IMG/VR virus record: IMGVR_UViG_3300005253_001115
Coordinates: 124,001-188,000 of that record
Strand: one strand, 5' to 3'
DNA: 64,000 nt
A program made the translations under genes and the position numbers. The notes under the pieces were generated by a model. That model saw only the letters and a program-made list of their open reading frames with translations, had not been told where the DNA came from and made no database searches. Within the stretch, counting starts at the first letter, position 1. Each line of letters begins with the position of its first letter. Shown here piece by piece: positions 40,654 to 61,222 of the stretch.

Positions 40654-41612
40654 TACTTCTCCTGAGATTTAGCCTGCCGCATGCGGCTGGCAGTACGCTT
40701 ATGTTCCGCTTCAATCTTGTCGATGGTAGCCGGTCGCCCATCAAAGAGATACTTGGTGGGGTTCATGGCCTTGTCACGATCGAAATTGCCTTTGTTGTGG
40801 AAACCCCATTTTCCAAAATGTTCAACATAAGATACAAGACTTGTAACCGCCTTACGTCCCGCGATTTCCCTGGAGTAGAAGCCGTCCCAGCCTCGCCCGT
40901 CCGGCACCTGAACCTTCTTGGGATTGTCCCGGAAACTCTTCATTCGGAAGAACATCGAGATGCCAGCCGCCATGCCACGTACCGAGGTGTATGGGTCGAT
41001 TACTTGGTTCTCGGTTCGTTTGCCACGAGGCGAGTGGAACTTGGCGTTGTAGAGGCAAATTGTACCCCAATTCGGGTACATTTCCATAATCTCGTGAAGA
41101 CGGTAGAAGAAATGTGGATCGTGTAGGCCGTCGCTATCGACGTGATAGAGGTACTCTGGTCCGTCAGGCCCAAAGTCCTCATCGAGCCAGGGCTTGAAGA
41201 TATCCGGCTTGAAATCACCCAGTACGCTCTTGGTAATGTTCGAGCGCAGGTTCTTAACGCCCCGCTTGCCACCCCTGGAGCGCTCGTGCCGGTACACCCG
41301 GTCGCAGAACTGCGCCAGCCACTCCTCGTCATATTCGTCGGAGCCGTCGTCATGGATGTACAGTTTCGCTTCCATCTTGTGGCGGTTCGTAGCCCCGATG
41401 CACATCTCTGCCGTGCCTCGGCGATTGTAGGTAAGAGGCGTGATGAGGGTCTTACGGGAGAGTGCCTTGACAGCTTCGTGATCGTAGTCAGCGAAGTGCG
41501 CAACAGCGTCAAACGGGACAATATATCCCGGCGCATTTGGATCAAACGGAATGGCTATAGACTTCACAGCTCGGGAAGGTGCCGGATTTTTTGGATCGGG
41601 TCTAATTGCCAT
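40653..41612 (-). CDS. GT-A fold (GT2-like) glycosyltransferase
   Basis: TYNRR, IHDDGSD, YLYHVDSDGLH (DxD motif), GWD, SYVEHFG. Confidence 0.75.
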   Translation of the reverse strand: MAIRPDPKNPAPSRAVKSIAIPFDPNAPGYIVPFDAVAHFADYDHEAVKALSRKTLITPLTYNRRGTAEMCIGATNRHKMEAKLYIHDDGSDEYDEEWLAQFCDRVYRHERSRGGKRGVKNLRSNITKSVLGDFKPDIFKPWLDEDFGPDGPEYLYHVDSDGLHDPHFFYRLHEIMEMYPNWGTICLYNAKFHSPRGKRTENQVIDPYTSVRGMAAGISMFFRMKSFRDNPKKVQVPDGRGWDGFYSREIAGRKAVTSLVSYVEHFGKWGFHNKGNFDRDKAMNPTKYLFDGRPATIDKIEAEHKRTASRMRQAKSQEK

Positions 41613-42402
41613 TTCGGTTGTTTTTCCTGTGAAGGGCTAGTGTCAAGGCGAAGACCTCATCTAAGTCGTCTCCCGCTGCGACTACTTTAGGGTAGCTGCG
41701 CATTTTGGCGGGAAAACGATTAGTGAAGGATGCTACGGTTGGCACCCCCAATGCTGCTGCGATGTGGAATCCTCCGCTGTCCGGTCCCACAAACAGACGG
41801 GAGCATTGAATCTCATTCGCCATCTTTAGCATGTGGGAGCGCCCAGGCTCCATGTGGTCCTGCCCCACCATCCTCACGAGAGGGTGCTGCCCGTGGGAAT
41901 CCATGAACTCCATGAAGCGCGAAATGACCCTGCGCCCGGATTCCCATGCCTTGTTGCGGGGCTCCTGTGGGATGTGGAAGGAGATATCGACAGTGGGTGG
42001 GGCCTTGATCTCAGGATGGGAGATCTCCGGGTAGCGGTCATCCTCGGTCCTTACAGGACACATTGTGCCGTCTAGGTAGAGCTTGGGTTGCCTGCGCTCC
42101 AGAGTGACACCGGCAGCCTCCGCAAAAGCGTCGATACCGTGTTGGCCGAAGGGTGCTCGCTCGATTACACCGTGTAGATTTACATGCACATCATACCCCT
42201 CGGGGGTAGGGTCCCAGCAGCCGGTACGAGTACAGAGAATCTCATCAATCAGGGGGTGATAGAGCATCAGGTCGTAAACGTGCCTGTGGGTCCGGTAGGT
42301 AATGTAACAGGGGGCATACTTATCGTGAAGAGCCCGGAGGATGGGCTCTGTCATAAGCATGTCTCCGGCACCACCGAGACGTGTAAGAAGAATTCTAGTC
42401 AC
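41602..42402 (-). CDS. GT9 (ADP-heptose heptosyltransferase-like) glycosyltransferase
   Basis: ILLTRLGGAGDMLMTEPILRAL...HPLIDEI...LFVGPDSGGFHIAAALGVPTV; GTG start at 42402. Confidence 0.85.
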   Translation of the reverse strand: MTRILLTRLGGAGDMLMTEPILRALHDKYAPCYITYRTHRHVYDLMLYHPLIDEILCTRTGCWDPTPEGYDVHVNLHGVIERAPFGQHGIDAFAEAAGVTLERRQPKLYLDGTMCPVRTEDDRYPEISHPEIKAPPTVDISFHIPQEPRNKAWESGRRVISRFMEFMDSHGQHPLVRMVGQDHMEPGRSHMLKMANEIQCSRLFVGPDSGGFHIAAALGVPTVASFTNRFPAKMRSYPKVVAAGDDLDEVFALTLALHRKNNRNGN

Positions 42403-43402
42403 GAAGAGTGCCCACCCAAGAACTTGCAGCCCCGTCAGCAGGAACATCTTCCCCGCTGATAAACTTCATCATCTTTTCCATTTGCTGGTCCCAGCCCCAG
42501 TTGGCGGACCATTCCCAACCCCGTCTTGCGATCTCTAGCCGTTCTTTGCTTTGATCCTTGTCCATCCAGTAACGTGCCTTCTCCAGAAGGTCCGGCACGT
42601 CACCGAAATTGAAGGTTACTAGCTGGTTGCCTTCCTCGAAGGAAGCAGCCACGTCCGTGTTCCTCTCGCTGAGAGCGAAGCCGCTGGAAGTTAGCAGGCG
42701 CACTAGGCGATTTGATGTGATGCCAACAGGGGTATCACCCTCACCCGGAGTACCACACACCATGTTCAGGCAAATGCCGCTGTTGTAGTACAACTTAGAA
42801 GCGTCCTCGTGGAAGATCCGCTTGTTGTGATGTACGCGAAAACCGTTACGCGCGAGAGCGGAAATTTTCGCCCGCCGACCACCGTCCCCTTTGTAGTTCG
42901 CGGACCCCAGAAACGCAATCTGGTCTGGGTTGGTGCGTGGAACATCAAGGTTCTGTGGACGCCAAAGACTGTGGCGACAACCCTGGTATATCTGGGCGAT
43001 TCGCCCCTTGAAGCCGTTGTTTCGGAACCAACGAGCGCCCTCTGATCCTGTCAAGAGGATACGGTCACACAGCAAACCGCGCTTCCCAATCTCATCTGGG
43101 CGACCCGGAGGACCACAGCCATTACCGCTAACGGAATCAAAGGTAAGGTACGTTGTGTCAGGCAGCGCGTTTACTAGGGCTGTGTAGACGCCCAGTGGGA
43201 TTACGGTGCCTTTACCGATTATGGTCGTATCGCAGCCCTCTGCCAGGGATGTTACGTAGTTGACGTAAGAATGGCTCTTGACAAGAGCGTTCTTGTTGGT
43301 CTCGATTTCTACCCATGTATGTCCCCCGGCCCGAAGACCGTCCAGCACACCGTAGATAGTGCTGCGCTTGTCGTTGAACGGGGCCATGATTGCAACCTTC
43401 AT
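42395..43402 (-). CDS. CgeB/DUF3880-like GT-B glycosyltransferase
   Basis: IAFLGS..Y...R...YYNSGICLN...TSNRLVRLLTSSGFALS...EIARRGWE; start MKVAIM, ATGA-coupled to hldD. Confidence 0.75.
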   Translation of the reverse strand: MKVAIMAPFNDKRSTIYGVLDGLRAGGHTWVEIETNKNALVKSHSYVNYVTSLAEGCDTTIIGKGTVIPLGVYTALVNALPDTTYLTFDSVSGNGCGPPGRPDEIGKRGLLCDRILLTGSEGARWFRNNGFKGRIAQIYQGCRHSLWRPQNLDVPRTNPDQIAFLGSANYKGDGGRRAKISALARNGFRVHHNKRIFHEDASKLYYNSGICLNMVCGTPGEGDTPVGITSNRLVRLLTSSGFALSERNTDVAASFEEGNQLVTFNFGDVPDLLEKARYWMDKDQSKERLEIARRGWEWSANWGWDQQMEKMMKFISGEDVPADGAASSWVGTLRD

Positions 43403-44352
43403 AGTCCCAACCTCCTTACATAAGCGTTGATACCTCTCTGTAGGTCGATGAAGGACTGCGTATAGCCCGCGCGCCGCAACTTCGTCATCTCGGCCTTGGT
43501 GTAATACTGGTACTGGTCTCGAATGTCTTCCGGCGTGTCCACCCATACGATCTTGGGAAAGACTTTGAGGGCTTCGAAGGCTTTGATAGCTAGATCTAAG
43601 AAGGGGCTGGATGCGCCTGTACCTAGGTTGTAGATGCCACGCTTCGAGTTGGCAATAGACCAGTGCAGCACCTTCACCACGTCATCGACGTAGATGAAGT
43701 CTCGGGACTGCATACCGTCATCGTACTCTTCGTTGTGTGACCGAAACAGTATCAGCTTCTTTGTTTCCTTGATCTGTTTTAACGCCTGGTACACCATGCT
43801 GGCCATGCGGCCCTTATGGGACTCGCCGTATCCGTAGACGTTGAAGAACTTGAAGCCTGCCCAGCTCGGAGGTACGATACCTCGACGCTCTAATTTCAGA
43901 ACATCTAGGTCGAAGGCGTGCTTGGACATGCCGTAGTGGTTTAGTGGCATCAGGTTCCGCAGGTCGTCTTCGTCGTCCGAGAACGTATCCGCTGCTCCGT
44001 AGGTGGCTGCGCTAGAAGCGTACACGAAGGGAACCAGATACTCGGAAGCGTACTCCCACAGGTCGTGAGAGAAGTCCGTGTTGAGTCTACGAAGCTCGTG
44101 TATGTCGGAAGCTGCGGTGTCCGTAATAGCCCCTAGGTGAATAATGGCATCAATGTGCCGTGGGGCATCATGAAGAAGATGCTGCATGATGTCGTCGGTA
44201 TCAAGCTTCAGACCAAAATCGAGCCCATCGTGGTCTGGTCGGGAGAAATTGGCGAGCTTATCGACAGAGATCAGCTCGATCTTTTCCTTGTTGCAGCTCT
44301 CCACGAACCGGGCTCCGATGAACCCGGCGGCTCCTGTGACTAGGTATCTCAT
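43399..44352 (-). CDS. hldD: ADP-L-glycero-D-manno-heptose 6-epimerase
   Basis: VTGAAGFIG, HLGAITDT, YASSAATYG, PLNHYGMSK, FKFFNVYG..E.HKGRMASMV, QSRDFIYVDD, GIYNLGTG, YQYYTKAEMTKLR.AGY are HldD/RfaD-specific motifs. Confidence 0.92.
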   Translation of the reverse strand: MRYLVTGAAGFIGARFVESCNKEKIELISVDKLANFSRPDHDGLDFGLKLDTDDIMQHLLHDAPRHIDAIIHLGAITDTAASDIHELRRLNTDFSHDLWEYASEYLVPFVYASSAATYGAADTFSDDEDDLRNLMPLNHYGMSKHAFDLDVLKLERRGIVPPSWAGFKFFNVYGYGESHKGRMASMVYQALKQIKETKKLILFRSHNEEYDDGMQSRDFIYVDDVVKVLHWSIANSKRGIYNLGTGASSPFLDLAIKAFEALKVFPKIVWVDTPEDIRDQYQYYTKAEMTKLRRAGYTQSFIDLQRGINAYVRRLGL

Positions 44353-44362
44353 GTCTGTACCT

Positions 44363-44929
44363 TTAGGGTATCTTGTAGAAGCACGCCTGAATATCGTCCA
44401 TGCCGTTCCAGTCCCTGGCCTGGAGAGGCTCTAACGAAAGGCGTGCAACAGTAGCTTCAAGCTGGTCCGGGAATACCTCGACACCGTAATCGTGGGCCGC
44501 GATGACAGACCCCATGGGGAGATGGTCGGCGTAGAAGTTGAACTCATCGACTTTGTTACCGCCGTCGCAGAAAAAGAAAGTGGGGCGATTGTCCATGAGG
44601 TTCGTGATAGCGCCCAGGCACTCCCAGTGATCTTGTGGGGAATTTCGCACGCCCAGGGCGTTGAATACAGGAAGAAGTGGCTCGTGTAGTTCGGGTCTGT
44701 TGTCGTAGGTAAGGAGTCTGTTCCCGCGCTGTACCGCGTGGAGGGCCAAAATCACCGACAGTGCTCCGGCTCCTGTCCCGATCTCCACAAAGCGTTGGAG
44801 CTGAGGGTTGGACGTAACGATGTCGTCAATGACCTTGTAAAGCCAGTACGTGTGCTGCTGACGCTGCCCTAGGAAGGTCTTGTACCATCGCTCTTGCACT
44901 ACCGGGTTGTCTCTGTTGTTGGGCCTCAC
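44363..44929 (-). CDS. Class I SAM-dependent methyltransferase (Methyltransf_24/CmcI-like)
   Basis: FVEIGTGAGALS, FFCDGG, GSVIAAHDY. Confidence 0.75.
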   Translation of the reverse strand: MRPNNRDNPVVQERWYKTFLGQRQQHTYWLYKVIDDIVTSNPQLQRFVEIGTGAGALSVILALHAVQRGNRLLTYDNRPELHEPLLPVFNALGVRNSPQDHWECLGAITNLMDNRPTFFFCDGGNKVDEFNFYADHLPMGSVIAAHDYGVEVFPDQLEATVARLSLEPLQARDWNGMDDIQACFYKIP

Positions 44930-45585
44930 AGCGGAACCGAAATCAAAGCTTCACCCTGCCCGGAAGGTAGGTGTATGTAGAACCAACCCGTGTCCGCAAC
45001 GAATGTCTTAACAGCCGCCGTTACCCCCACCTGTGCCCTATTCCACGGAGCTTCTTCCTTAAAGTCGTCTGCTAGAATGAAGCCGCCGGGACGCACAATG
45101 TCACGGGCAAGATACAGATCGCTGAGGCACCCTTCCTCGCTATGGTCGCCGTCAACGTGTACCAAATCAAAAAGCTCCATAGACTCCGCAAGGACCCGGG
45201 CCTCTGGGCTCAGAGAGTTTACCTCATAAGTAACAACAGTAGCCTCTGGGTACTTGTCTCGGAGAGTGTCTGTGGCGTGGTGCATGAAATTTCTCCTACC
45301 GCCCCAAGGAGCAAGACCCTTAACGCTCTGATTCATGTCCATACCCACATAGGTAGCTGTCGGGCATGCGTACAAAAAGGCCGCTGCCGCGTAGCCTGCC
45401 CGTATTCCTATCTCAAGAATGCGCTTTGGCTGCGTATGCTTGGCAATGGCAGCCTTATAGAGAGTGGATTCGTAAGCATCTGCCTTCCACGTCTTGCCGT
45501 CCGGCCCAGGGGGCTCAGACGGGTGAATGAACGGAGTATAGTCGAAAGTGCAACTTTCCGCACTAGCAATTATTTCTTCTCTCAC
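44926..45585 (-). CDS. Class I SAM-dependent methyltransferase (Methyltransf_24)
   Basis: ILEIGIRAGYAA, FDLVHVDGDHS, PGGFILADD, GVTAAV. Confidence 0.85.
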   Translation of the reverse strand: MREEIIASAESCTFDYTPFIHPSEPPGPDGKTWKADAYESTLYKAAIAKHTQPKRILEIGIRAGYAAAAFLYACPTATYVGMDMNQSVKGLAPWGGRRNFMHHATDTLRDKYPEATVVTYEVNSLSPEARVLAESMELFDLVHVDGDHSEEGCLSDLYLARDIVRPGGFILADDFKEEAPWNRAQVGVTAAVKTFVADTGWFYIHLPSGQGEALISVPL

Positions 45586-46193
45586 TGTGCTTCTCCTTCA
45601 AACCAGAGCATAATTTCGATACCGTTGAGAATCTTATAGCGGGAAGCTCGCGCAGCTAGCTCATCATGTTCATCTAGTTGAACCCTGTGTTCCTTGGCGT
45701 CAGCCCATTTCTTGTCGGAGTAGGGAGCTACGAAAACCACAGCCTCCCTTGCTCGACTCAAACATTTTGGAAGCACGATGTCCATAAGTTGATCTCGTGT
45801 GAAGTGTTCAATCGTATGCGAAGAGAAAACGTAATCGAATGTCTCCACGTCTTCCTTTAGTATATCATGGACCCGAAAATCTATGGACTTGTCCAAACCC
45901 TTTTTGGCCTCCTCCAAAAGGTCCGTGGCCAAAATTGTGCCCAAATTCGATAGGTTACGAATAAGGTTGCAGTGTACTGGGTGCCCCGCTCCGAAAACCC
46001 ACAAGGAACTACCTTCCTTGAATTCGGAAATGGCCTCGTCGTAGTACCGAGGCGGTTTTTTTTCTTCCCCGCCGGGACCACCACGGTACTTCTTACGGTA
46101 GTACGGAAAAGTAGCAGCCTCGGTAGTAGACTCTCTTTCGATCATGCGTTTCAGCGGTTTGCCTGCGTCTTCAGGAATTGGTGTCCACTTCAT
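45582..46193 (-). CDS. Class I SAM-dependent methyltransferase-like protein
   Basis: WVFGAG (variant motif I), ATDL, FDYVFSSHTIEHF, FVAP. Confidence 0.7.
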   Translation of the reverse strand: MKWTPIPEDAGKPLKRMIERESTTEAATFPYYRKKYRGGPGGEEKKPPRYYDEAISEFKEGSSLWVFGAGHPVHCNLIRNLSNLGTILATDLLEEAKKGLDKSIDFRVHDILKEDVETFDYVFSSHTIEHFTRDQLMDIVLPKCLSRAREAVVFVAPYSDKKWADAKEHRVQLDEHDELAARASRYKILNGIEIMLWFEGEAQ

Positions 46194-46819
46194 TTTCGTG
46201 CCCTGAAGCAATAGTGAGAATTCTTTCTCTCGGCACTAATAATCCCAGCATCATACTCGACCTCTGCGCCAAGGGATTCGGCAATAATTTCGGGACTTCT
46301 AACGTTCATGTGACTACATCGTTTTCGGGGAGGGTCTACATCGAAGGCCCATCCTCTATATTTTGGGTGTGCGTCATCAATGATAAGGAACATGCCTCCG
46401 GGTTTCACAACACGGCTAAGCTCTGAAGACCAGATCTTAAACTGTTCTGGTTCTACTATGTGCTGAATGACGGTGATGGCCACAACGGAATCAAATTCGC
46501 CGTCGTCGAAAGGAATTCTGTCATCCGGCAGGGCCACGTAAGATGTACCCTCCAGCTCCGGGGCAAATTTGAAAGCTCCTTCGTTAATGTCGGCTCCAAC
46601 GTAACTATCAGCCCTCTCCATCAGGGCTTCGGCAAAGCGACCCACCCCACACCCAAAATCCAGAACCCTCCCTATACTGGGCGGACAGATTCCCAGGATG
46701 GCGTCCTTGAATACTTCCCACTGCTGGTCTTTTACCGTGGTGCTGTTGCGTGTGGATACGTACAAGGCACCTTGGTTTTCTAGTCTGTCGGCCCACCACT
46801 GTCGGTTATACTCCGCCAT
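46190..46819 (-). CDS. Class I SAM-dependent methyltransferase (Methyltransf_11), paralogue of 51075-51698
   Basis: VLDFGCGVGRF, IPFDDGEFD, VIQHI, RVVKPGG; RBS GGAGG before MAEYNR. Confidence 0.9.
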   Translation of the reverse strand: MAEYNRQWWADRLENQGALYVSTRNSTTVKDQQWEVFKDAILGICPPSIGRVLDFGCGVGRFAEALMERADSYVGADINEGAFKFAPELEGTSYVALPDDRIPFDDGEFDSVVAITVIQHIVEPEQFKIWSSELSRVVKPGGMFLIIDDAHPKYRGWAFDVDPPRKRCSHMNVRSPEIIAESLGAEVEYDAGIISAERKNSHYCFRARK

Positions 46820-47384
46820 ATCCGTAACCTCCCTTTCTAGGTCGGGCAGCATCCACCTTTTCCGCGATGTTCTTAAAGGTGTTTCTGTCCAGACCAAGCC
46901 ACTGTGCTATACCGTCCATAGTGTCGTGAAACTCGCTCATAAGATCTTCGTACCTTACGGTATAGATATCGGACCGGGTTTCCGCAAAACTGAGCCACTT
47001 TTCAACGGCTTCTTTCCAGCACTCATAAGGTGTCATGTATTGCTGGTCTCCTTCGATCCACCTGTTTAGTTGCTCCTGCTTCACTTTTCCGTCCTCTACC
47101 AGCTTGATCCAGGGTGTATTATTGAAAACTTTTGGAGAAATATCGCCGTTAATTCGGGATGACTGGGCTAGAAGAGAAGCTAAAACGTCTTCGTAGTTTC
47201 TCCACACGTACAAAAACCTTTCGTTCTTCTTCTCGAACAGTTTACCCAGAGGCTCGCCTGAGAAGGGAGGAGGCCATCTGTGGTGTTGGTTTCCCCTCTG
47301 TTGCATCGGTCCAAAAGCGTTCACCTCTACGAGATGGCATAGGTAGTGATTGCCGGAGCGCGGGTGGCCGAAGACGTGTATCAT
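46806..47384 (-). CDS. PAPS-dependent sulfotransferase
   Basis: 5'-PSB HPRSGNHYL, 3'-PB LYVWRNYEDVLAS, VRYEDL...IAQWLGL. Confidence 0.8.
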   Translation of the reverse strand: MIHVFGHPRSGNHYLCHLVEVNAFGPMQQRGNQHHRWPPPFSGEPLGKLFEKKNERFLYVWRNYEDVLASLLAQSSRINGDISPKVFNNTPWIKLVEDGKVKQEQLNRWIEGDQQYMTPYECWKEAVEKWLSFAETRSDIYTVRYEDLMSEFHDTMDGIAQWLGLDRNTFKNIAEKVDAARPRKGGYGYGGV

Positions 47385-48178
47385 AGAAGATGGTCCATAA
47401 ATTGGTGAAACGGCTCTGGATTTTCTGTTCTGCTTTTGAAGTACATGGTCAAGTAAGTGACCCATTGAGGAAATAACCGTCCGTAAAATGCTTGGGTGTG
47501 ACCAGAGGTTCTTGTGTACACCACACTAGGAACTTTTTGGCTGAGGGCAACGTAAGCCATTAGTCCCTGTATGCCTATGAACCCCGTGGCTCGGGATACT
47601 ACACCCATGCCCTCTAGTAAAGAGGTTTTCCCTATCAAATTCAACACATTGGGCTTAGTGAAAGTAGAGTACCTGTTAGCCTCCCCCACAAGTACAAAAG
47701 TATGCTTTGGGTACGCTCCGGTCATCCATTCCAATTCTTCATGTATGTCACGATGTCCCTGCTGCGGCTTTCCCGACTTAGGACAACAGGCTATGTAACT
47801 CCCTACTGGTTCGTGTTCTGACACAGGGAAAGTAAACTTCGGGTAGGCTGTCACGGGGGCGATTCCTCTGTTTGCACTCACGATTGGGCTGGGTCTGAAT
47901 CCGGGAGGGTCTCCTCTGACATTAGCTGGACAGGACCCTAGTGTTCTTTTCCACTCCTCGTGGTCTATGAAATTCACGTCTACGTTATGAGAAAGGGAAT
48001 AGATCTTCTCTATAAGGGGAATACCTTGCTGTTGCGTCTCAGGATCGCTACTGATGCACTGGTTGACAGTTATAGGTGTCCGGCTGGGGTCGTATAGTAT
48101 GGCGTTGAACAGGAATGCGTCTCCAATTGATCCTTTGCATACCAGATTCCGAACGTCGAGAGGGGGGCGTCTGCTCAT
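47381..48178 (-). CDS. Divergent GT9-like glycosyltransferase, paralogue of 50323-51075
   Basis: GSIGDAF, FVLVG, NLIGKTSLLE..GVVSRA..FIG...YVA...VPSV. Confidence 0.7.
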   Translation of the reverse strand: MSRRPPLDVRNLVCKGSIGDAFLFNAILYDPSRTPITVNQCISSDPETQQQGIPLIEKIYSLSHNVDVNFIDHEEWKRTLGSCPANVRGDPPGFRPSPIVSANRGIAPVTAYPKFTFPVSEHEPVGSYIACCPKSGKPQQGHRDIHEELEWMTGAYPKHTFVLVGEANRYSTFTKPNVLNLIGKTSLLEGMGVVSRATGFIGIQGLMAYVALSQKVPSVVYTRTSGHTQAFYGRLFPQWVTYLTMYFKSRTENPEPFHQFMDHLL

Positions 48179-48783
48179 AGCGGCTGACCTCCGATCTTCT
48201 CCTTAACGTCAACAAATTCACGGTTTTCCTCTCCGAGCCACGCAGCCATGTCACTCGTCGTTTTCTGAAATGAAGAAACAAGGAGATCGTAGTCCACCAC
48301 ATACACGTCTGTGCGATGAGCGGAGAAGTCTAACCAACTGCTCACATGGTGCTTCCAGTATTCATAAGGTGTCACCTCTGGAGGAGGGAGTGCCGAGGAA
48401 AAAGCACTGCCCGCGCCTCTCTTCGTTTCTCCGTCTATTTTCCACGCCCAGTGAGTTCCAGCTACGTGAAGCTCTCCCCAGGGAGTATCTGAGAACTCGG
48501 TCACTGTCAAATCTGTCCTGTGGATGCCGAACCTACCGGGCATGCGGAGAATAGACTTCGCCACGTCTTCGAACCCACGCCAAATGTAGAGATGTGGCAG
48601 GTCGTTTTCCTTGAAGGTGTTGGGTAAGCCATGCAGGGGGTAAGCCATGGTCTTTCGTCCATTTGCTTCGCGTAGGTGTCCCCAGGCCACTTCCCATATA
48701 CTGGGCTTGTGGATGAAGTTGGCATTCAGCACTGCCATGAGGTAGTGCGTGCCAGAGCGTGGGTGACTGTGAACGTTGTACAT
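48175..48783 (-). CDS. PAPS-dependent sulfotransferase
   Basis: HPRSGTHYL, LYIWRGFEDVAKS, YWKHHVSSW, VDYDLL...AAWLG. Confidence 0.8.
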   Translation of the reverse strand: MYNVHSHPRSGTHYLMAVLNANFIHKPSIWEVAWGHLREANGRKTMAYPLHGLPNTFKENDLPHLYIWRGFEDVAKSILRMPGRFGIHRTDLTVTEFSDTPWGELHVAGTHWAWKIDGETKRGAGSAFSSALPPPEVTPYEYWKHHVSSWLDFSAHRTDVYVVDYDLLVSSFQKTTSDMAAWLGEENREFVDVKEKIGGQPL

Positions 48784-49433
48784 TAACTTTTCGGTAGTGC
48801 TATCAAATAGATGGAATCCTTGTGGATCTTCTCTATGGTGTGGGTAGCTTCCAGTTCGCTAGTGATGAATTCGGAGGTTCCTGGGTTGTCGTAACCACGT
48901 TCCACGTACCAGTTCTTCGAGCCGTTCTTGTCGTACAGTCGCATGTCGTCAATGATAAACACGTCACCGCTGATGTCTCTTTGGGCCTTGATAACGCCCA
49001 GCTCCCTCTCAAGAGGGAAGGCAACGTCTCTATGAAGAAGCTCTGCCGTCGTTGCCTCTTTGTCTTTTTCGAATCTGGCACCCTTCTTCGGTACATGGGC
49101 GTCGAGCCACCACAGAATGTTTCCCTCAGAGATCTCAATAGCCTCGGGGAGCTTGTCCGCAGACTCTCCGTGAATCAGGTTGATGCTGTCGTCTAGCATC
49201 TTACGTTCGGGTGCTCCGGGTGCTGGATCGTGGTGCATTAGACCTATTTCGCCTGCCGATACAATCCACTTGTAGTCTATCTCGACCGCTACGAACTTCT
49301 CGATCCCAGACAGATTAGTAGTGGCCCAAGCCATACTTCGACCGTGTTCCAAACCGGTCTCAACAAGCGTCTTCAGGTTGTACTTGTCAACCCAGAGTTG
49401 GACCGTTAGAGCGTCACTTCCTAAATATCCCAT
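48783..49433 (-). CDS. Methyltransferase-like protein of polysaccharide gene clusters
   Basis: LVETG..HG, AVEID, IHGES...L, WWLDAH, PL..EL..I, IIDD.RL. Confidence 0.65.
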   Translation of the reverse strand: MGYLGSDALTVQLWVDKYNLKTLVETGLEHGRSMAWATTNLSGIEKFVAVEIDYKWIVSAGEIGLMHHDPAPGAPERKMLDDSINLIHGESADKLPEAIEISEGNILWWLDAHVPKKGARFEKDKEATTAELLHRDVAFPLERELGVIKAQRDISGDVFIIDDMRLYDKNGSKNWYVERGYDNPGTSEFITSELEATHTIEKIHKDSIYLIALPKS

Positions 49434-50326
49434 TACGTTCTCCTTTTTGCGGCGTGATAAGCCCTGAAATCCTCAATTTGCGGTAGACCGGCCTCTTCGA
49501 TTACCGGAGGATGCGGACCTTCGTACACATACAAGTTACCCCCACTATCGGGTGTAAAGCCCGGAGTCCAGCAGGGATTTCTGCGCTTGTAGTCTGCACC
49601 GAACAGCTCCATGCTCTTGTCGGTCCAGTAGGCTTCGTTATCTAGCTCAAAAGGCCGATAGATCTGATTCAACCAGTTCCATTTCCTCTGTTGTGCCTCG
49701 AATACGCGACCGGACTGCTGCTTGTATTCAGTCTTCCATTGTCTTTCCTTGTAGTCCTCTGGTGTCAGTAGACTGTAGTGGAACATACCTTTCTGCCCGG
49801 TGTCTCTAACAACATTGCGGTACTCAACCCGAGAATTCCAAGAGCAGGTCGGCAGGAACTTGCCGTTTCGGTCCTTGATTTTGTACAGGCGGTGGTGGGT
49901 GGAATGCAGGTACCTCTCCATATTGATAAAGAAGAACTTAGCGGGAAACTGGATAGTGTCTGCTGTCGGGTCATTCTCGATAATGTCTCTGGCTTCCTGT
50001 AGCGTTTCATCGAAATAAAACTCGTCCACATCCAACATGAACACCCAGTTTCCCGGCTCGTACAGAGTGCTGGCTGCCAGCATATTATTCAATGTCTTGC
50101 ACTTCCCTGTCGCTATGAACCCGTCGTTTATACAAGGCACCAAGGTAATCTTGTCGCCAAATTCTTGGGCCTTGAGCAGGGTAGTATCATGAAGCTCTGC
50201 CAGCAGCGGGGTATGTGCTCCGATGGAAACTATAACTTCGTCACAGAAGCTTAGAGCTTGCTTGATAGACGGACCAATGAAATCCTCAGCGTAATGCGCC
50301 CCGATCAGACCTATGATTTTGTTCAT
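49433..50326 (-). CDS. GT-A fold (GT2-like) glycosyltransferase
   Basis: FCDEVIVSIG, DTT, WVFMLDVDEFY (DxD motif), MFHYS. Confidence 0.75.
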   Translation of the reverse strand: MNKIIGLIGAHYAEDFIGPSIKQALSFCDEVIVSIGAHTPLLAELHDTTLLKAQEFGDKITLVPCINDGFIATGKCKTLNNMLAASTLYEPGNWVFMLDVDEFYFDETLQEARDIIENDPTADTIQFPAKFFFINMERYLHSTHHRLYKIKDRNGKFLPTCSWNSRVEYRNVVRDTGQKGMFHYSLLTPEDYKERQWKTEYKQQSGRVFEAQQRKWNWLNQIYRPFELDNEAYWTDKSMELFGADYKRRNPCWTPGFTPDSGGNLYVYEGPHPPVIEEAGLPQIEDFRAYHAAKRRT

Positions 50327-51075
50327 ATCATGAACCTCTTGAACGCCAACGGGTCTTCCGATCGGCAGGTTTTGACTACAGAACAGTATCTCTCCCATTC
50401 AGGGAATAGGCGAGATCGAAACGCTTTATCGTACCCCACCGATTTGGTGTAAACAAAACTGGGGACCTTGGAACTGGCTGCGACGTACACCATCAATCCC
50501 TGTACGCCGATGAATTTTTTGGCTCGGGATACAATTCCGATAGCTTCCAAAATTGAAGTCTTTCCTATCAAGTTCGTCACATTATGGCGGGAATAGCCAA
50601 GGAATTCTGGATTGTCACCCACGAGAACGAACTGCTGGTCTTTGTACTCCTCGATTAGGGAGGATATCTCATCCTCCCCCACCTGTCTGTGTCCCTCGTT
50701 TGATTTCCCGCCACGGGGAGAGCAGGCGATGTAGCTTCCTGTCACCTGTTTCGTTGCGGGGAACTTAAACGGTGGGTGTGGGTTCATTACGCTCATCCCA
50801 CCCTCTCTTTCTCTTGCTTTTTCTATGGACGGCCAGAGGCGAGGAAATTTCTGCGAAGGTAGACTGTTAAACTCTTCTTTGTTAACGAATTCCACCTGAA
50901 TTTTTGGCATAAGAGAATAGATCTGCCGGATATGCGGCTCCCAATGGTCTACAGCATTGCCAGCGTAATCGCTGCACTGCTTGATAAGGATCTTCTCGCG
51001 ACTCGCTAACCCGTGAACTACACAGTTAACGATGTACGAGTCCCCAAGTGTTCCTCTGCACTTAAACGTTTTCAT
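50323..51075 (-). CDS. Divergent GT9-like glycosyltransferase
   Basis: GTLGDSY, FVLVG, NLIGKTSILEAIGIVSRAKKFIG...YVAASSKVPSFV. Confidence 0.7.
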   Translation of the reverse strand: MKTFKCRGTLGDSYIVNCVVHGLASREKILIKQCSDYAGNAVDHWEPHIRQIYSLMPKIQVEFVNKEEFNSLPSQKFPRLWPSIEKAREREGGMSVMNPHPPFKFPATKQVTGSYIACSPRGGKSNEGHRQVGEDEISSLIEEYKDQQFVLVGDNPEFLGYSRHNVTNLIGKTSILEAIGIVSRAKKFIGVQGLMVYVAASSKVPSFVYTKSVGYDKAFRSRLFPEWERYCSVVKTCRSEDPLAFKRFMI

Positions 51076-51698
51076 TAGACTTTCCTTGATCGGAACAAGT
51101 AGTGAGAATTAGGCCGCTCGGCGCTGATGACTCCGAAATCCTCATCAATTACCGAACCCAGAGACTCGCTTATGACTTGGGGACCACGGATCTTCATGTG
51201 TTTACCCATCTTAGGGCTCTGATCTGCGTCATCAATGATGTAGATAAGGCCACCGGGCTTAACTACCCGGGCGATTTCGCTGGACCAGATAACGTAGTGC
51301 TCGGGGTCAACAATGTGCTGGAGAACGGTGAGGGCCATAGCGGAATCGAAGCTATTGTCCTCGAAGGGAATACGGTCCTCTGGCAGACCGACGAACTCCA
51401 CGTTCGGGAGATCGGGGGCATGCTCGAAAGCGCCTGAGTTGATATCGACGCCTACGTAGCTAGAAGCGAACTCCCTAGCCGCCGCAGCAAAGCGACCTAC
51501 ACCGCAGCCAAAGTCGATAATGCGCCCCGGGTCAGTACCCTCCATGGCCTGCCTGAGGGAGTCTCGGAAGACTTCCCACTGGTGGTCATTCACTGTCTTG
51601 CTGTTTCGCGTGGACACATATAGGGCACCCTCCTTCTTCAGGCGAGCAGGCCAGTATTCCCTGGCGATGTACGGGTTTTTTCGCAGGTCAGTGCTCAT
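51075..51698 (-). CDS. Class I SAM-dependent methyltransferase (Methyltransf_11)
   Basis: IIDFGCGVGRF, IPFEDNSFD, VLQHI, RVVKPGG. Confidence 0.9.
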   Translation of the reverse strand: MSTDLRKNPYIAREYWPARLKKEGALYVSTRNSKTVNDHQWEVFRDSLRQAMEGTDPGRIIDFGCGVGRFAAAAREFASSYVGVDINSGAFEHAPDLPNVEFVGLPEDRIPFEDNSFDSAMALTVLQHIVDPEHYVIWSSEIARVVKPGGLIYIIDDADQSPKMGKHMKIRGPQVISESLGSVIDEDFGVISAERPNSHYLFRSRKV

Positions 51699-52528
51699 GT
51701 CTTTGTCCAATGCTTAATGGGGGTTTCTGGGTTCATTCTGGCCACACAGCTATTGAAGGATAAGTCCACGTTAGGGGTTGGAACGTCGATGAACGTGACT
51801 GGGGTATTGAAGGGGTTCCAGTAGCTAAGGTAGCGTTCCATAGAAACTACGGGACGCCCGTACCAAGAGACGTGAGGTGTGCCGCAAGCACTAGCAAGAT
51901 GTAATGTCCCGCTGCTGGGTCCGATAGCAACTTTAGCCGCAGACAAGGCTCCACACAGGTCTCCCAGACCAACTCCTCTGAAGTCTACCGTACCTTCGAT
52001 GTACACGTTGTCAGTGCCTCCGTAACAGGCCACAGAATACCCGGCGTCTAGAAGACGTTTGACCAGACCTTCGCATTTGTCCCGTGGATACTCCTTTTCC
52101 GGGTAAGATCGTTTGCGGTACTTCTTCGGACCACGGAAGGCGCACATGATGTCTGCAACATGCTTGGGCCTCTCTGACCCCAGCTTCCTCCATTCTTTGG
52201 GGTGAATACCGTCCACCTTATCAGCCACCTTGATGGCCTTGAACTCTTTCTTGGCGTGGGCTTTCCAGAACCACATAGGGGTAATTGACCTCGTTCCCGC
52301 AGGAGGCTGGAAGGCAGGCTTGGACACTTTGCCAGAGTACATGTCGAAGTCCGGCAAGTGCGGATTTATGATGATCTCGTCCGCAAACTCGTACAAGTAT
52401 TCGCTGTCGGGCTGTGTCTCCACAATGACATGATCGTAGTCCTTAGCGATGTGCCGGATAGACGGGCTCCACGAGGCGATCTCCCACCCGAACTCTCCTA
52501 CCCAAGGCCCTGCGTACAGTTTCTTCAC
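51695..52528 (-). CDS. GT9-like glycosyltransferase
   Basis: GPWVGEFGWE N-terminus; K.YP...LV..L, DFRG..LGDL...AIGPSSGTLHLASACGTPHV. Confidence 0.7.
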   Translation of the reverse strand: MKKLYAGPWVGEFGWEIASWSPSIRHIAKDYDHVIVETQPDSEYLYEFADEIIINPHLPDFDMYSGKVSKPAFQPPAGTRSITPMWFWKAHAKKEFKAIKVADKVDGIHPKEWRKLGSERPKHVADIMCAFRGPKKYRKRSYPEKEYPRDKCEGLVKRLLDAGYSVACYGGTDNVYIEGTVDFRGVGLGDLCGALSAAKVAIGPSSGTLHLASACGTPHVSWYGRPVVSMERYLSYWNPFNTPVTFIDVPTPNVDLSFNSCVARMNPETPIKHWTKT

Positions 52529-53418
52529 GTCTTGTCTCCGAGCATGTAGTCCAGCCTGTGCGCAGCCGTGTCCCTACTTCGATACAGCTCTGTACCCCAG
52601 TTGCGAATTCTTGCCACCTCCCCAGGATTCTCTAAGTAGTAGCTGGCCAGTTCTCGGGCCTCCTGTGGAGTCTTAAACCACACCAGATGTTTCTTGTTCT
52701 CGAACAGCTTCTCGATTCCGGGGAACCAGTTCACCAACGCGAAACCGTTGGAACTAAGGATATTGTACAGGCGGTTCGAGGTGTACCCTTTGGCGGGTAG
52801 TGATATGGACAAGGACACGGGAGACATAGCATACAGGTACTTCTGGTCCTTGGTTAGACCCTCTCTGTTGATGATCTTGACAGGGTGTTCTTTCCTGATC
52901 TCTTCGATAATAGGGGAGCGGTTTCCGTGAAACTCCCTGGCACTAATCAACGCCTTCAATTTGTCCGTGTCTGTCGGGTTTGAAGCCTCGAACGCGCTAC
53001 CTGGTCGTACTATCCCAAGGAACAGGATGTCCTCATCGAACTTCCTTCCGTTTTTGACATCGGCATCGTTTCCGCACTGCGGGAGGTAGTAGGCTGGCTT
53101 ACCAAAATGCTCAGCGTAGGCATCCGTGAACAACTGGTTGCATACAAACATTTCGGAAGCAGTTGTGCCGGATGTGATGATCTTCGGGTCCCGCAAATCG
53201 CACATCCACCACAGTATTTTGGCAGAAGTCTGGAAAGTCGGTGGGGTATTCATGAAGTACACGATGACATCGTAGTCGTCCCAACTCTTACCGCCAGGGG
53301 CAATGCCTTCCTTGCCCTTGGGCATCTCCAGCACATCAAAGCCTTTTGCCTTGGCGGCGATGGCTAGGGATGCTTGGATGGGACCGATAGGGAGTCTGTA
53401 CGCCACTGCTACTTTCAC
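52525..53418 (-). CDS. CgeB/DUF3880-like GT-B glycosyltransferase
   Basis: WWMCD.R, YLPQC, DILFLG, YTSNRLYNILSSNGFAL..FPGIE.LF...HLVWF...YYLENP. Confidence 0.8.
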   Translation of the reverse strand: MKVAVAYRLPIGPIQASLAIAAKAKGFDVLEMPKGKEGIAPGGKSWDDYDVIVYFMNTPPTFQTSAKILWWMCDLRDPKIITSGTTASEMFVCNQLFTDAYAEHFGKPAYYLPQCGNDADVKNGRKFDEDILFLGIVRPGSAFEASNPTDTDKLKALISAREFHGNRSPIIEEIRKEHPVKIINREGLTKDQKYLYAMSPVSLSISLPAKGYTSNRLYNILSSNGFALVNWFPGIEKLFENKKHLVWFKTPQEARELASYYLENPGEVARIRNWGTELYRSRDTAAHRLDYMLGDKT

Positions 53419-60156: not shown

Positions 60157-60274
60157 TGTCTGGCTCCTCTAGAGATAATACAGCGGGGTTACGATCCGGC
60201 CCCCCTTGGGGACGCAGCCCCTCTTCGGGGTCTTCGTGGCTGCGGGCCGGTTGTCCGCAAAACGGGCATTTCAT
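60149..60274 (-). CDS. Small hypothetical protein (41 aa)
   Basis: Hand translation MKCPFCGQPARSHED...EEPDSD; ATGA-coupled to the DHH gene and fills the gap exactly. Confidence 0.35.
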   Translation of the reverse strand: MKCPFCGQPARSHEDPEEGLRPQGGPDRNPAVLSLEEPDSD

Positions 60275-61212: not shown

Positions 61213-61222
61213 AATTCTCGAC

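What the first reader, a model, noticed from the sequence alone, without database searches (positions are those of the whole stretch)
46806..48783. Two sulfotransferases flanking a glycosyltransferase
Seen: paralogous ORFs with HPRSG(T/N)HYL and LY(I/V)WR..EDV..S motifs sit on either side of the GT9-like gene 47381-48178, all coupled by ATGA overlaps. Established: these are the PAPS-binding 5'-PSB and 3'-PB motifs. No PAPS-synthesis gene (cysC/cysDN) is in the window. Inference: the phage sulfates its glycan using host PAPS, creating an anionic surface. Glycan sulfation by a phage is, to my knowledge, not biochemically characterised.
Basis: partly seen in the sequence, partly recalled or inferred. 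Interest (0 to 1): 0.6.

Follow-up and report, generated by a model that had tools for sequence, protein, structure and literature searches.

The report
Sulfotransferase pair in phage glycan island
A 267-kb uncultured marine-sediment phage carries two small sulfate-adding enzymes on either side of a sugar-adding enzyme, inside a 15-kb gene block that appears to build a methylated, sulfated heptose sugar chain with sulfate donor taken from the host; what the chain is attached to is still unknown.

Summary
On the minus strand, ST2 (48175-48783), a GT-B glycosyltransferase (47381-48178) and ST1 (46806-47384) are joined by two ATGA overlaps. Both STs pass Pfam Sulfotransfer_1. They keep the PAPS 5'-PSB and 3'-PB motifs and an invariant His. 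The ST1 model matches only PAPS sulfotransferases, not kinases. The middle gene has no sequence-family hit, but its model is closest to GT9 heptosyltransferases.

The ST-GT-ST trio recurs in three other sediment contigs and is under purifying selection. It lies in a ~15-kb island (40653-55265) with about ten glycosyltransferases, about nine methyltransferases and an ADP-heptose 6-epimerase.

The whole 266,640-bp phage record (89% complete) has no APS kinase, ATP sulfurylase or CysD/CysH, so host PAPS is the likely donor. It also has no polytopic membrane protein.

The acceptor is not shown. My preferred target is the phage's ten collagen-like Gly-X-Thr tail fibres, whose module contains a methyltransferase-GT2-TPR-GT9 fusion. 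Remodelling of host LPS core is a serious rival.

Phage sulfotransferase genes have been reported before with function unknown. This is therefore a new variant of a known kind, of moderate interest.

The parts
48175..48783 (-). ST2, 202-aa PAPS-type sulfotransferase
   Evidence: Pfam Sulfotransfer_1 28.7 bits (cut-off 22). HPRSGTHYL and YIWRGFEDVAKS motifs. 87% identical ortholog in L006; dN/dS 0.13.
47381..48178 (-). GT9L, 265-aa compact GT-B glycosyltransferase, structurally nearest to GT9 heptosyltransferases
   Evidence: No family hit. Model pLDDT 89. WaaF 1psw Z 15.3, 3tov Z 15.2, WaaC Z 14.5, TibC Z 12.2. Sub-threshold PF01075, E 0.028. 18 non-self homologs. dN/dS 0.11.
46806..47384 (-). 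ST1, 192-aa PAPS-type sulfotransferase (start at 47384, not 47465)
   Evidence: Pfam Sulfotransfer_1 41.8 bits. Model pLDDT 81. All listed Foldseek PDB hits are PAPS sulfotransferases. ATGA overlap. dN/dS 0.14.
46190..46819 (-). Class I SAM methyltransferase immediately downstream of ST1 (paralog of 51075-51710)
   Evidence: Methyltransf_11 60.5 bits. Start ATG 46819 with GGGAGG upstream.
45582..46211 (-). Weak methyltransferase-like ORF
   Evidence: Only sub-threshold Methyltransf_11/25 hits.
44926..45585 (-). Methyltransf_24 methyltransferase
   Evidence: 47.9 bits.
44363..44929 (-). Methyltransf_24-like ORF (sub-threshold)
   Evidence: 19.9 bits, below cut-off.
43399..44352 (-). ADP-L-glycero-D-manno-heptose 6-epimerase (HldD type)
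   Evidence: NCBIfam TIGR02197 equivalog, 307.4 bits against a cut-off of 274.6. Pfam Epimerase.
42395..43546 (-). Glyco_trans_1_2 (CgeB-like) glycosyltransferase; the true start is probably downstream of the listed one
   Evidence: 39.5 bits.
41602..42447 (-). GT9 heptosyltransferase-family protein
   Evidence: PF01075 31 bits. Best NCBIfam hits are LPS heptosyltransferases, below cut-off.
40653..41612 (-). GT2-like ORF (sub-threshold), distal end of the island
   Evidence: Glycos_transf_2 18.7 bits, below cut-off.
48783..49433 (-). 216-aa protein upstream of ST2, probably a class I SAM methyltransferase fold
   Evidence: No Pfam hit. Atlas structure TM 0.77-0.80 to methyltransferase-named, mostly viral clusters. 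TAATG overlap with the ST2 start.
49433..50326 (-). GT2-like ORF (sub-threshold); start taken at the ATGA overlap with the gene upstream
   Evidence: Weak Glyco_tranf_2_4 / Glycos_transf_2 hits. ATGA overlap at 50323-50326.
50323..51075 (-). GT9L', 250-aa paralog of the middle gene
   Evidence: 39% identity, E 1e-61. Sub-threshold PF01075, E 0.02.
51075..51710 (-). Class I SAM methyltransferase
   Evidence: Methyltransf_11 62.4 bits.
51695..52528 (-). GT9 heptosyltransferase-family protein
   Evidence: PF01075 24.3 bits against a cut-off of 22.
52525..53418 (-). Glyco_trans_1_2 glycosyltransferase
   Evidence: 51.2 bits.
53415..53855 (-). Small methyltransferase
   Evidence: Methyltransf_11 24.7 bits.
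53852..54688 (-). GT2 glycosyltransferase
   Evidence: Glyco_trans_2_3 36.8 bits. PHROG glycosyltransferase hits.
54672..55265 (-). TylF-type sugar O-methyltransferase, proximal end of the island
   Evidence: TylF 71.1 bits.

Best explanation
ST1 and ST2 are two anciently diverged PAPS-dependent carbohydrate O-sulfotransferases of a jumbo phage.

Proposed pathway. They are translated together with a heptosyltransferase-like GT-B enzyme, as part of a ~15-kb operon of soluble enzymes working in the infected cell's cytoplasm. Host heptose phosphate would be activated by a phage HldC-like adenylyltransferase and epimerised by the phage HldD. Heptose and other sugars would be added by GT9, GT9-like, GT2 and GT1-like transferases. 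The chain would then be O-methylated by about nine methyltransferases and sulfated at two different positions by ST1 and ST2. The sulfate donor would be host-made PAPS, because the phage has no sulfate-activation genes.

What is shown: family, motifs, fold, operon structure, conservation, and the absence of PAPS-synthesis genes and membrane proteins.

What is inferred: the carbohydrate acceptor, the heptose content and the host PAPS supply.

Acceptor. My preferred target (about 0.4) is the phage's own collagen-like Gly-X-Thr tail fibres, giving a negatively charged glycan coat on the virion. Host LPS core is the next most likely (about 0.3).
For: Sulfotransferase identity:
- Pfam Sulfotransfer_1 is above cut-off for both proteins.
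- A profile of 9 family members hits 35 PDB sequences, all sulfotransferases. It aligns HPRSGxHYL to the PKSGTHW 5'-PSB loop, YIWRnfxDVaxS to the YIVRNPKDTAVS 3'-PB, and YEDL..F..G to YEEM..F..G.
- H7, R9, S10, G11, H35, R62, S70, Y145 and G185 are invariant in the family.
- All listed Foldseek PDB hits of the ST1 model are PAPS sulfotransferases bound to PAP or PAPS.

Conservation:
- The ST-GT9L-ST order with 4-nt overlaps recurs in L006, L008 and L004/L005.
- ST1-type and ST2-type sequences form separate groups, with one of each per phage.
- dN/dS is 0.10-0.14.

Glycan context:
- HldD equivalog; GT9 genes; methyltransferases and other glycosyltransferases.
- An rfaE-domain-II-like adenylyltransferase elsewhere in the genome.
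- Cellular homologs (24-26% identity) in marine-sediment Desulfatiglandales. The one examined (NaphS2) sits in a cluster with a GT4, a methyltransferase and an ABC-transporter ATPase.

Host PAPS: the 266,640-bp record has no APS kinase, ATP sulfurylase or PAPS_reduct/CysD.

Cytoplasmic action: no transmembrane segment in any island protein, and no credible polytopic membrane protein in the genome.

Fibre target:
- Ten collagen-like ORFs with about 760 G-X-Y triplets, about 480 of them with Thr at Y.
- A 938-aa methyltransferase-GT2-TPR-GT9 protein lies inside that tail-fibre module.
Against: - No biochemical data exist, and no RNA run holds the locus.
- The proteins are short (192-202 aa, against 220-360 aa for the matched PDB sulfotransferase chains). 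TM-scores to solved sulfotransferases are only about 0.5. Residues 30-50 and the C-terminus of the model are low-confidence.
- The canonical C-terminal GxxGxxK / RKG element is at best vestigial (an R/K-x-G-G motif around the invariant G185).
- The 5'-PSB has Arg where cytosolic SULTs have Lys.
- The host is unknown and may not make PAPS. The record is 89% complete, so a cysC could lie in the missing part.
- The island lies among replication and early-type genes (helicases, ligase, PhoH), about 40 kb from the fibre module, not within it.
- HldD and GT9 are classical LPS-core genes, which favours the host-surface rival.
- Collagen-like fibres are common in phages with no known glycosylation.
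Confidence: 0.55

Rival explanations
1. Host-surface remodelling. The island, including ST1 and ST2, modifies the host's LPS inner core (heptose region) or another lipid-linked glycan on the cytoplasmic face of the inner membrane. The host's own MsbA/Lpt or ABC exporters then carry it outward. This would change the cell surface during infection, for example to block superinfection or to stop progeny sticking to debris.
For: - HldD, the HldC-like enzyme and the GT9 genes are the classical LPS-core toolkit.
- Core assembly needs only peripheral, soluble enzymes, which fits the absence of membrane proteins.
- The island sits with early and replication genes.
- Cyanomyoviruses carry comparable LPS / cell-wall gene sets that are read as host-surface modification (PMC12801897).
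- The ST homolog in the bacterium NaphS2 sits in a cluster with a GT4, a methyltransferase and an ABC-transporter ATPase.
Against: - No Kdo, lipid A or O-antigen ligase functions were seen among the ORFs scanned (the island, its flanks and three other regions).
- This reading does not explain the GT9 fusion with TPR repeats inside the tail-fibre module, or the ten Gly-X-Thr fibres.
- A virulent-looking jumbo phage gains less from slow envelope turnover than a temperate phage would.
Confidence: 0.3
2. DNA hypermodification. The glycosyltransferases, methyltransferases and sulfotransferases decorate modified bases of the phage DNA to evade restriction.
For: Phage glycosyltransferases are known to hypermodify DNA with diverse glycans (Pyle et al. 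2024, as cited in PMC12619734). The island lies next to replication genes and a cpYpsA SLOG protein.
Against: - No thymidylate-synthase-type hydroxymethylase is present in the genome to create the hydroxymethyl handle.
- About ten glycosyltransferases, an ADP-heptose pathway and about nine methyltransferases are far beyond known DNA-glycosylation systems.
- The ST homolog examined in a bacterium (NaphS2) sits among polysaccharide-type genes.
Confidence: 0.05
3. The sulfotransferases act on a non-carbohydrate acceptor, such as a small molecule, a lipid, or a protein Tyr, Ser or Thr. Their position among glycosyltransferases would then be incidental.
For: The closest solved structures are small-molecule cytosolic SULTs and StaL. 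Acceptor specificity cannot be read from these models.
Against: - Tight translational coupling to a glycosyltransferase is conserved in four independent contigs.
- Every related island pairs the STs with glycosyltransferases, methyltransferases or carbamoyltransferases.
- The resemblance to SULTs reflects the shared PAPS core, not the acceptor site.
Confidence: 0.07
4. The ORFs are inactive relics or P-loop kinase-like proteins, not working sulfotransferases.
For: Small size; missing canonical C-terminal PAPS-binding element; Lys-to-Arg change in the 5'-PSB.
Against: dN/dS is 0.10-0.14. The PAPS-contact and catalytic positions are invariant across diverged members. The listed fold matches are all sulfotransferases. 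From my own knowledge, Arg at this position occurs in active sulfotransferases such as tyrosylprotein sulfotransferase.
Confidence: 0.03

Closest known systems
PAPS-dependent sulfotransferases of Pfam PF00685 (e.g. SULT7A1 5x2b, SULT1E1, StaL 4eec)
   Same: Same family by score. Same 5'-PSB and 3'-PB motifs, a conserved His, the YEDL helix, and the same fold.
   Different: - One third shorter (192-202 aa).
- Arg instead of Lys in the 5'-PSB.
- C-terminal GxxGxxK region reduced to a short R/K-x-G-G tail.
- Only 14-19% identity to solved chains.
- Phage-encoded and embedded in a glycan operon.
Bacterial carbohydrate sulfotransferases in surface-polysaccharide clusters (nearest found: Desulfatiglandales/NaphS2 homologs; NodH, LpsS and Stf0 from my own knowledge)
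   Same: Small soluble sulfotransferases next to glycosyltransferases and methyltransferases. They depend on cellular PAPS.
   Different: Only 20-26% identity. The bacterial clusters bring their own exporter (ABC_tran); the phage island has none.
Mycobacteriophage virion glycosylation (Freeman et al. 2023, cited)
   Same: Phage-encoded soluble glycosyltransferases proposed to decorate the phage's own structural proteins in the cytoplasm.
   Different: Those phages use a few glycosyltransferases on capsid and tail-tube C-termini. I know of no sulfation, heptose pathway or collagen-like acceptor reported there. In the present case the virion target is inferred, not shown.
LPS / cell-wall gene clusters of cyanomyoviruses (P-SSM2, S-SCSM1, S-SCSM2R; PMC12801897)
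   Same: A large block of glycosyltransferases and sugar-nucleotide enzymes in a lytic myovirus, with unknown target.
   Different: Different phage lineage and habitat. The cited paper does not mention sulfotransferases or heptose.
GT9 heptosyltransferases WaaC/WaaF and the protein heptosyltransferase TibC
   Same: The middle gene's model is a GT-B fold nearest to these enzymes (Z 12-15). An ADP-heptose epimerase lies in the same operon.
   Different: - About 60-70 residues shorter.
- Fails the PF01075 threshold and profile comparison.
- The conserved nucleotide-site motif reads I-Q-G-L-M.
Collagen-like glycoproteins BclA (Bacillus exosporium) and Mimivirus fibrils (my own knowledge, not tested here)
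   Same: Gly-X-Thr collagen repeats serve as O-glycosylation sites, with methylated sugars made by dedicated glycosyltransferase and methyltransferase genes. The phage has ten such fibre genes with a glycosyltransferase fusion among them.
   Different: No evidence here that the fibres are glycosylated. To my knowledge, sulfation is not a feature of BclA.

Membership tests
PAPS-dependent sulfotransferase (Pfam PF00685 Sulfotransfer_1) | Profile score above the curated gathering threshold | tested here: met
   ST1 41.8 bits and ST2 28.7 bits against a cut-off of 22. The whole-genome scan finds exactly these two.
PAPS-dependent sulfotransferase (Pfam PF00685 Sulfotransfer_1) | 5'-phosphosulfate-binding loop (P-K/R-S/T-G-T/x) | tested here: met
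   H-P-R-S-G-N/T-H-Y-L at residues 7-15. R9, S10 and G11 are invariant in 9 members. The motif aligns to PKSGTHW of SULT7A1. Arg replaces Lys.
PAPS-dependent sulfotransferase (Pfam PF00685 Sulfotransfer_1) | 3'-phosphate-binding motif (strand-R-x7-S-helix) | tested here: met
   Y59, R62 and S70 are invariant. The motif aligns to YIVRNPKDTAVS.
PAPS-dependent sulfotransferase (Pfam PF00685 Sulfotransfer_1) | Catalytic base His between the two motifs | tested here: inconclusive
   H35 is invariant and lies near the P-T-H of SULT7A1, but the HMM alignment is offset by a few residues and this part of the model has pLDDT 60-68.
PAPS-dependent sulfotransferase (Pfam PF00685 Sulfotransfer_1) | C-terminal R-K-G / GxxGxxK 3'-phosphate contact | tested here: inconclusive
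   Only a short R/K-x-G-G tail around the invariant G185. Model pLDDT is below 50 there.
PAPS-dependent sulfotransferase (Pfam PF00685 Sulfotransfer_1) | Sulfotransferase fold rather than a nucleotide-kinase fold | tested here: met
   All listed Foldseek PDB hits are sulfotransferases, probability 1.00, TM about 0.5. Atlas structural neighbours are also named sulfotransferases.
PAPS-dependent sulfotransferase (Pfam PF00685 Sulfotransfer_1) | Binds PAPS and transfers sulfate | not testable with these tools
   Needs a 35S-PAPS or PAP-release assay.
CAZy GT9 / Pfam PF01075 heptosyltransferase (middle gene 47381-48178) | Profile score above threshold | tested here: not met
   No hit in hmmscan. 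11 bits, E 0.028 in the genome scan. hhalign against the in-window GT9 gives probability 0.35%. No PDB sequence hit.
CAZy GT9 / Pfam PF01075 heptosyltransferase (middle gene 47381-48178) | GT-B fold closest to solved GT9 enzymes | tested here: met
   1psw Z 15.3, 3tov Z 15.2 and WaaC Z 13.6-14.5, against Z 12.3 or less for the other glycosyltransferases and epimerases listed. Three NDH-PSI supercomplex chains also scored Z 12.8-14.8.
CAZy GT9 / Pfam PF01075 heptosyltransferase (middle gene 47381-48178) | N-terminal G-D catalytic Asp | tested here: inconclusive
   G16, G19 and D20 are invariant in 19 homologs, after the first strand. Equivalence to WaaC Asp13 is from memory and was not aligned residue by residue.
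CAZy GT9 / Pfam PF01075 heptosyltransferase (middle gene 47381-48178) | Uses ADP-heptose as donor | not testable with these tools
   Only contextual evidence: an HldD equivalog in the same operon.
ADP-L-glycero-D-manno-heptose pathway | HldD epimerase | tested here: met
   TIGR02197, 307.4 bits against a cut-off of 274.6.
ADP-L-glycero-D-manno-heptose pathway | Heptose-1-phosphate adenylyltransferase | tested here: inconclusive
   C1:30948-31361 scores 151 bits to TIGR02199, its best hit by about 90 bits over the other families, but below the cut-off of 181.5.
ADP-L-glycero-D-manno-heptose pathway | GmhA isomerase and heptose kinase encoded by the phage | tested here: not met
   No TIGR00441 or TIGR02198 match in the genome. 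These steps would have to come from the host.
Phage virion glycosylation (mycobacteriophage type) | Glycan found on virion structural proteins | not testable with these tools
   Indirect evidence only: a glycosyltransferase fusion inside the fibre module and Gly-X-Thr fibres.

The most novel reading that the evidence does not exclude
A lineage of marine-sediment jumbo phages coats its collagen-like Gly-X-Thr tail fibres with a heptose-based oligosaccharide that is O-methylated and doubly sulfated. The sulfation is done by two minimal (~190-200 aa) phage sulfotransferases that draw on host PAPS. That would be the first sulfated glycoprotein coat of a bacteriophage, built by a virus-encoded pathway comparable in size to those of giant viruses.
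Probability: 0.3. Interest if true: 0.75.

Novelty: new variant of a known kind. Interest (0 to 1): 0.5.

Why it matters
Sulfated glycans are rare in bacteria and, as far as I could find, undescribed for phage particles. If the sulfate goes onto the virion, it would show that phages can tune surface charge and receptor or mineral binding with their own post-translational chemistry. That is relevant in sulfate-rich sediments. If it goes onto the host envelope, it would be a new form of phage-driven surface remodelling.

These are also among the smallest PAPS sulfotransferases. They come as a conserved pair with a partner glycosyltransferase, which makes them attractive for structural work and for enzymatic sulfation of sugars. 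The language-model atlas suggests that similar small proteins form many mostly viral clusters, so working out this pair could annotate a large uncharacterised group of phage genes.

Tried and rejected
Searches that found nothing:
- Megablast of 44000-53000 and tblastn of ST1 against GenBank phages: no match. The baseplate protein finds only Virus Rctr197k at 25% identity, so there is no cultured relative.
- PHROGs: no family for ST1, ST2 or GT9L.
- IMG/VR motif scan with the ST profile: no relative. IMG/VR relatives of GT9L (L021, L022) have no such ST within 6 kb.
- The ST1 single sequence against PDB was not significant (E 0.5). The 9-sequence profile was needed.
- GT9L against the in-window GT9 by BLASTP and hhalign, and against PDB by profile: nothing significant.

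Leads rejected or left inconclusive:
- A 431-aa ORF with six hydrophobic segments (C1:193062-194357) looked like a membrane protein, but it lies antisense inside a 698-aa ORF. I rejected it as an artefact.
- The APS-kinase scan gave only a 13-bit P-loop match.
- The relative's contig SDBU01000070 could not say anything about the host: SDBU01 is a whole Loki's Castle sediment metagenome assembly, not a genome bin.
- Sequencing runs: only DNA contigs from marine-sediment metagenomes and no RNA, so expression could not be tested and read laying was not used.

Steps not run:
- The large representative-protein search, because the family scans already settle the family and I make no claim of rarity.
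- Complex prediction, because I do not claim that these proteins bind each other.


Full report
**What is there.** The window is bases 124001-188000 of a single-contig IMG/VR virus record of 266,640 bp. The record is classed as linear and CheckV puts it at 89% complete. Almost every long ORF in the window is on the minus strand. PHROG hits include:
- a baseplate wedge (18587-19987),
- a sliding clamp (31080-32192),
- a DnaB helicase (37952-39322),
- a DNA ligase (62354-63739),
- a PhoH protein (55240-56991).

The genome also has 33 tRNA genes. It is a jumbo myovirus-like phage. Public runs that hold it are all marine-sediment metagenomes, from three studies. It has no close cultured relative.

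**The observation.** Three minus-strand genes occupy 46806-48783. I read both junctions. ...CTATGAGC... at 48175-48178 is the stop of ST2 overlapping the start of the middle gene. ...CTATGATA... at 47381-47384 is the stop of the middle gene overlapping the start of ST1. The ORF list extends ST1 to an ATG at 47465. The conserved N-terminus, which begins M-I-H-V-F-G-H-P-R-S-G as in all relatives, and the ATGA overlap show that 47384 is the real start.

ST1 (192 aa) and ST2 (202 aa) are paralogs: 32% identity, E 9e-29. Both exceed the curated threshold of Pfam Sulfotransfer_1 (41.8 and 28.7 bits against 22). A scan of the whole genome finds exactly these two.

**Are they sulfotransferases?** A nine-sequence alignment has these invariant residues: H7, R9, S10, G11, H13, Y14, L15, H35, Y59, R62, S70, W130, Y145 and G185. 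A profile built from it hits 35 PDB sequences at E<0.01, and all of them are sulfotransferases. The printed alignment to SULT7A1 puts:
- HPRSGnHYL on PKSGTHWL (the 5'-phosphosulfate loop),
- YIWRnfedvakS on YIVRNPKDTAVS (the 3'-phosphate motif),
- YEDL..F....G on YEEM..F....G.

The AlphaFold model of ST1 (pLDDT 81) finds PAPS sulfotransferases in every listed Foldseek PDB hit.

Some caveats remain:
- The proteins are about a third shorter than solved sulfotransferases.
- TM-scores are about 0.5.
- The loop around the putative catalytic His35 and the C-terminal tail are poorly modelled.
- The canonical C-terminal RKG / GxxGxxK element survives only as R/K-x-G-G.
- Arg replaces the usual Lys in the 5'-PSB.

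**The middle gene.** It has no Pfam, PHROG or NCBIfam hit. BLASTP, hhalign and a PDB profile search against GT9 proteins are all insignificant. It does have 18 non-self homologs and a paralog at 50323-51075 (39% identity, E 1e-61).

Its model (pLDDT 89) is a compact GT-B fold. The best structural matches are GT9 heptosyltransferases: WaaF Z 15.3, 3tov Z 15.2, WaaC Z 14.5, and the protein heptosyltransferase TibC Z 12.2. All other glycosyltransferases and epimerases listed score Z 12.3 or lower; three NDH-PSI supercomplex chains also score Z 12.8-14.8. The genome-wide PF01075 scan gives sub-threshold matches at the same motif in both paralogs (E 0.02-0.03).

'GT9-like' is therefore right as a description of the fold, but family membership by sequence is not met.

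**Conservation.** The word search finds only four non-self relatives of ST1. Their contigs are informative:
- L006 and L008 carry ST2-type, GT9L and ST1-type genes in the same order, with 4-nt overlaps at most junctions.
- L004/L005 is a 129-kb contig from the Loki's Castle sediment assembly. It is syntenic with the window (ligase, helicase, patatin, PhoH, then a glycan island). It carries three STs: ST-GT9L-ST1type, and GT9L'-ST2type.

A tree separates ST1-type from ST2-type sequences, with one of each per phage. The duplication is therefore old and both copies are retained. Against L006, dN/dS is 0.13 for ST2, 0.11 for GT9L and 0.14 for ST1. Related islands swap in carbamoyltransferases, or three STs in a row after a GT9. 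This is the pattern expected of a variable glycan-decoration cassette.

**The surroundings.** From 55265 down to 40653 the operon encodes, in order:
- a TylF-type O-methyltransferase,
- a GT2,
- a methyltransferase,
- a Glyco_trans_1_2,
- a GT9,
- a methyltransferase,
- GT9L',
- a GT2-like protein,
- a 216-aa methyltransferase-like protein,
- ST2, GT9L, ST1,
- four methyltransferases or methyltransferase-like proteins,
- an ADP-L-glycero-D-manno-heptose 6-epimerase (TIGR02197 equivalog, 307 bits against a cut-off of 275),
- a Glyco_trans_1_2,
- a GT9,
- a GT2-like protein.

Many junctions are 1- or 4-nt overlaps. Elsewhere in the genome there is a 137-aa adenylyltransferase whose best match by far is the heptose-1-phosphate adenylyltransferase domain of HldE (151 bits, below the cut-off of 181.5). 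There is no GmhA or heptose kinase. The sugar being handled is therefore most likely heptose, started by host enzymes and finished by phage enzymes.

**Donor.** The genome has no APS kinase (only a 13-bit P-loop match), no ATP sulfurylase and no PAPS_reduct/CysD family member, while all three searches ring in control genomes. Within the limits of an 89%-complete record, the phage must rely on host PAPS.

**Acceptor (inferred).** No island protein has a transmembrane segment. The only multi-segment candidate in the genome is an antisense artefact. The phage therefore brings no flippase, polymerase, priming transferase or exporter, and its enzymes must act on something reachable from the cytoplasm. 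No thymidylate-synthase-type hydroxymethylase is present, which argues against glycosylated DNA bases.

Two targets remain.

- *The phage's own proteins.* The genome has ten collagen-like ORFs, at C1:63-91 kb and at 107 kb. Together they hold about 760 G-X-Y triplets, about 480 with Thr at Y, and the four I scanned hit tail-fibre or tail-protein PHROGs. In the middle of that module sits a 938-aa protein with methyltransferase, GT2, TPR and GT9 domains. From my own knowledge, TPR repeats fused to a glycosyltransferase are typical of protein glycosyltransferases, and Gly-X-Thr collagen repeats are the O-glycosylation sites of Bacillus BclA.
- *The host's LPS inner core.* It is built from ADP-heptose by soluble GT9 enzymes and exported by host machinery. 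This matches the HldD/GT9 toolkit and the island's position among early and replication genes.

I put the fibre target at about 0.4, host LPS at about 0.3, and other acceptors at about 0.1-0.15. The remainder is uncertainty about the whole scheme.

That the acceptor is a carbohydrate at all is supported by the conserved coupling to a glycosyltransferase. It is also supported by the nearest cellular homologs (20-26% identity), found in marine-sediment Desulfatiglandales and one Planctomycetota MAG. The NaphS2 copy sits beside a GT4, a methyltransferase and an ABC-transporter ATPase. Those bacteria are plausible hosts or gene donors, but the identity is too low to say so.

**Comparison with what is known.** The enzymes are new, unusually small members of the PAPS sulfotransferase family. 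Phage sulfotransferase genes have been noted before: Sulfotransfer_3 genes in OM43-phage genomes and in Synechococcus phage S-SRM01, 'biological function... remains unclear' (PMC10580990); and a glacier-ice auxiliary gene (PMC8290583). Phrase searches for phage- or virus-encoded sulfotransferases found no characterisation.

The language-model atlas places ST1 nearest to several clusters of 50-92 proteins of 213-246 aa, most of them mainly viral, so the group is probably larger than the word search suggests. The closest system-level analogues are mycobacteriophage virion glycosylation and the cyanomyovirus LPS-type clusters. The paper I checked on the cyanomyovirus clusters mentions neither sulfation nor heptose, and I know of neither for mycobacteriophage glycosylation.

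**Verdict.**
- The enzymatic assignment is well supported.
- Host-PAPS dependence is likely.
- The 'anionic phage surface' is a reasonable hypothesis but is not shown, and it has one strong rival.

This is a new variant of a known kind, of moderate interest (0.5). Interest would rise to about 0.75 if sulfated fibres were demonstrated.

Noticed in passing
window 55240-56991 (-) and 32770-35715 (-): Two probable inteins. The PhoH gene is 583 aa with a LAGLIDADG/Hom_end insert at about residues 256-342; the ortholog in L004 is 216 aa with no insert. The UvrD-type helicase carries Hint plus LAGLIDADG domains near its N-terminus.
   Followed up: partly
G000:C1:63444-90661 and 107387-108730 (outside the window): Ten collagen-like ORFs with about 760 G-X-Y triplets, about 480 with Thr at Y; the four scanned hit tail-fibre or tail-protein PHROGs. 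That is an unusually large set for one phage.
   Followed up: partly
G000:C1:77675-80491 (+) (outside the window): A 938-aa fusion protein (methyltransferase, GT2, TPR repeats, GT9) sits inside the tail-fibre module between collagen-like fibre genes.
   Followed up: partly
window 60271-61242 (-): A weak DHH/DHHA1 protein, conserved in position in L004. From my own knowledge, NrnA-type DHH enzymes hydrolyse pAp, the inhibitory by-product of sulfotransfer. No test was made here beyond weak Pfam and PDB hits.
   Followed up: partly
window 40189-40653 (-): A circularly permuted YpsA SLOG-family protein (122.9 bits) lies directly after the last gene of the glycan island. Its function is unknown.
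   Followed up: no
window 37549-37989 (-): A small cupin with a D-lyxose-isomerase-like hit (32.3 bits) lies between the helicase and the island. It may be a sugar isomerase.
   Followed up: no
window 56909-57814 (-): A patatin-like phospholipase (101.6 bits) lies next to PhoH and is conserved in the related contig L004.
   Followed up: no
G000:C1:73-24017 and C1:27968-29272 (outside the window): A block of 33 tRNA genes at one end of the record, followed by an RtcB RNA ligase (426 bits).
   Followed up: no
L023 (Deltaproteobacterium NaphS2, ADZZ01000764.1) 5212-5826; L024, L025, L026: The nearest cellular homologs of the phage STs are in marine-sediment sulfate reducers (Desulfatiglandales) and a Planctomycetota MAG. 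The NaphS2 copy sits with GT4, methyltransferase, radical-SAM/SPASM, ABC_tran and sulfatase-family genes. This is a possible clue to the host or gene donor.
   Followed up: partly
L008 5126-5770: The called ST1-type gene in this contig starts at 5243 and lacks the PAPS loop, but the open frame reaches back to 5126 and scores 216 bits against the ST profile. The gene call is probably too short.
   Followed up: partly
G000:C1:193062-194357 (-) = L007 5062-6357: A 431-aa ORF with six hydrophobic stretches lies wholly antisense to a 698-aa ORF. It is most likely not a gene.
   Followed up: yes
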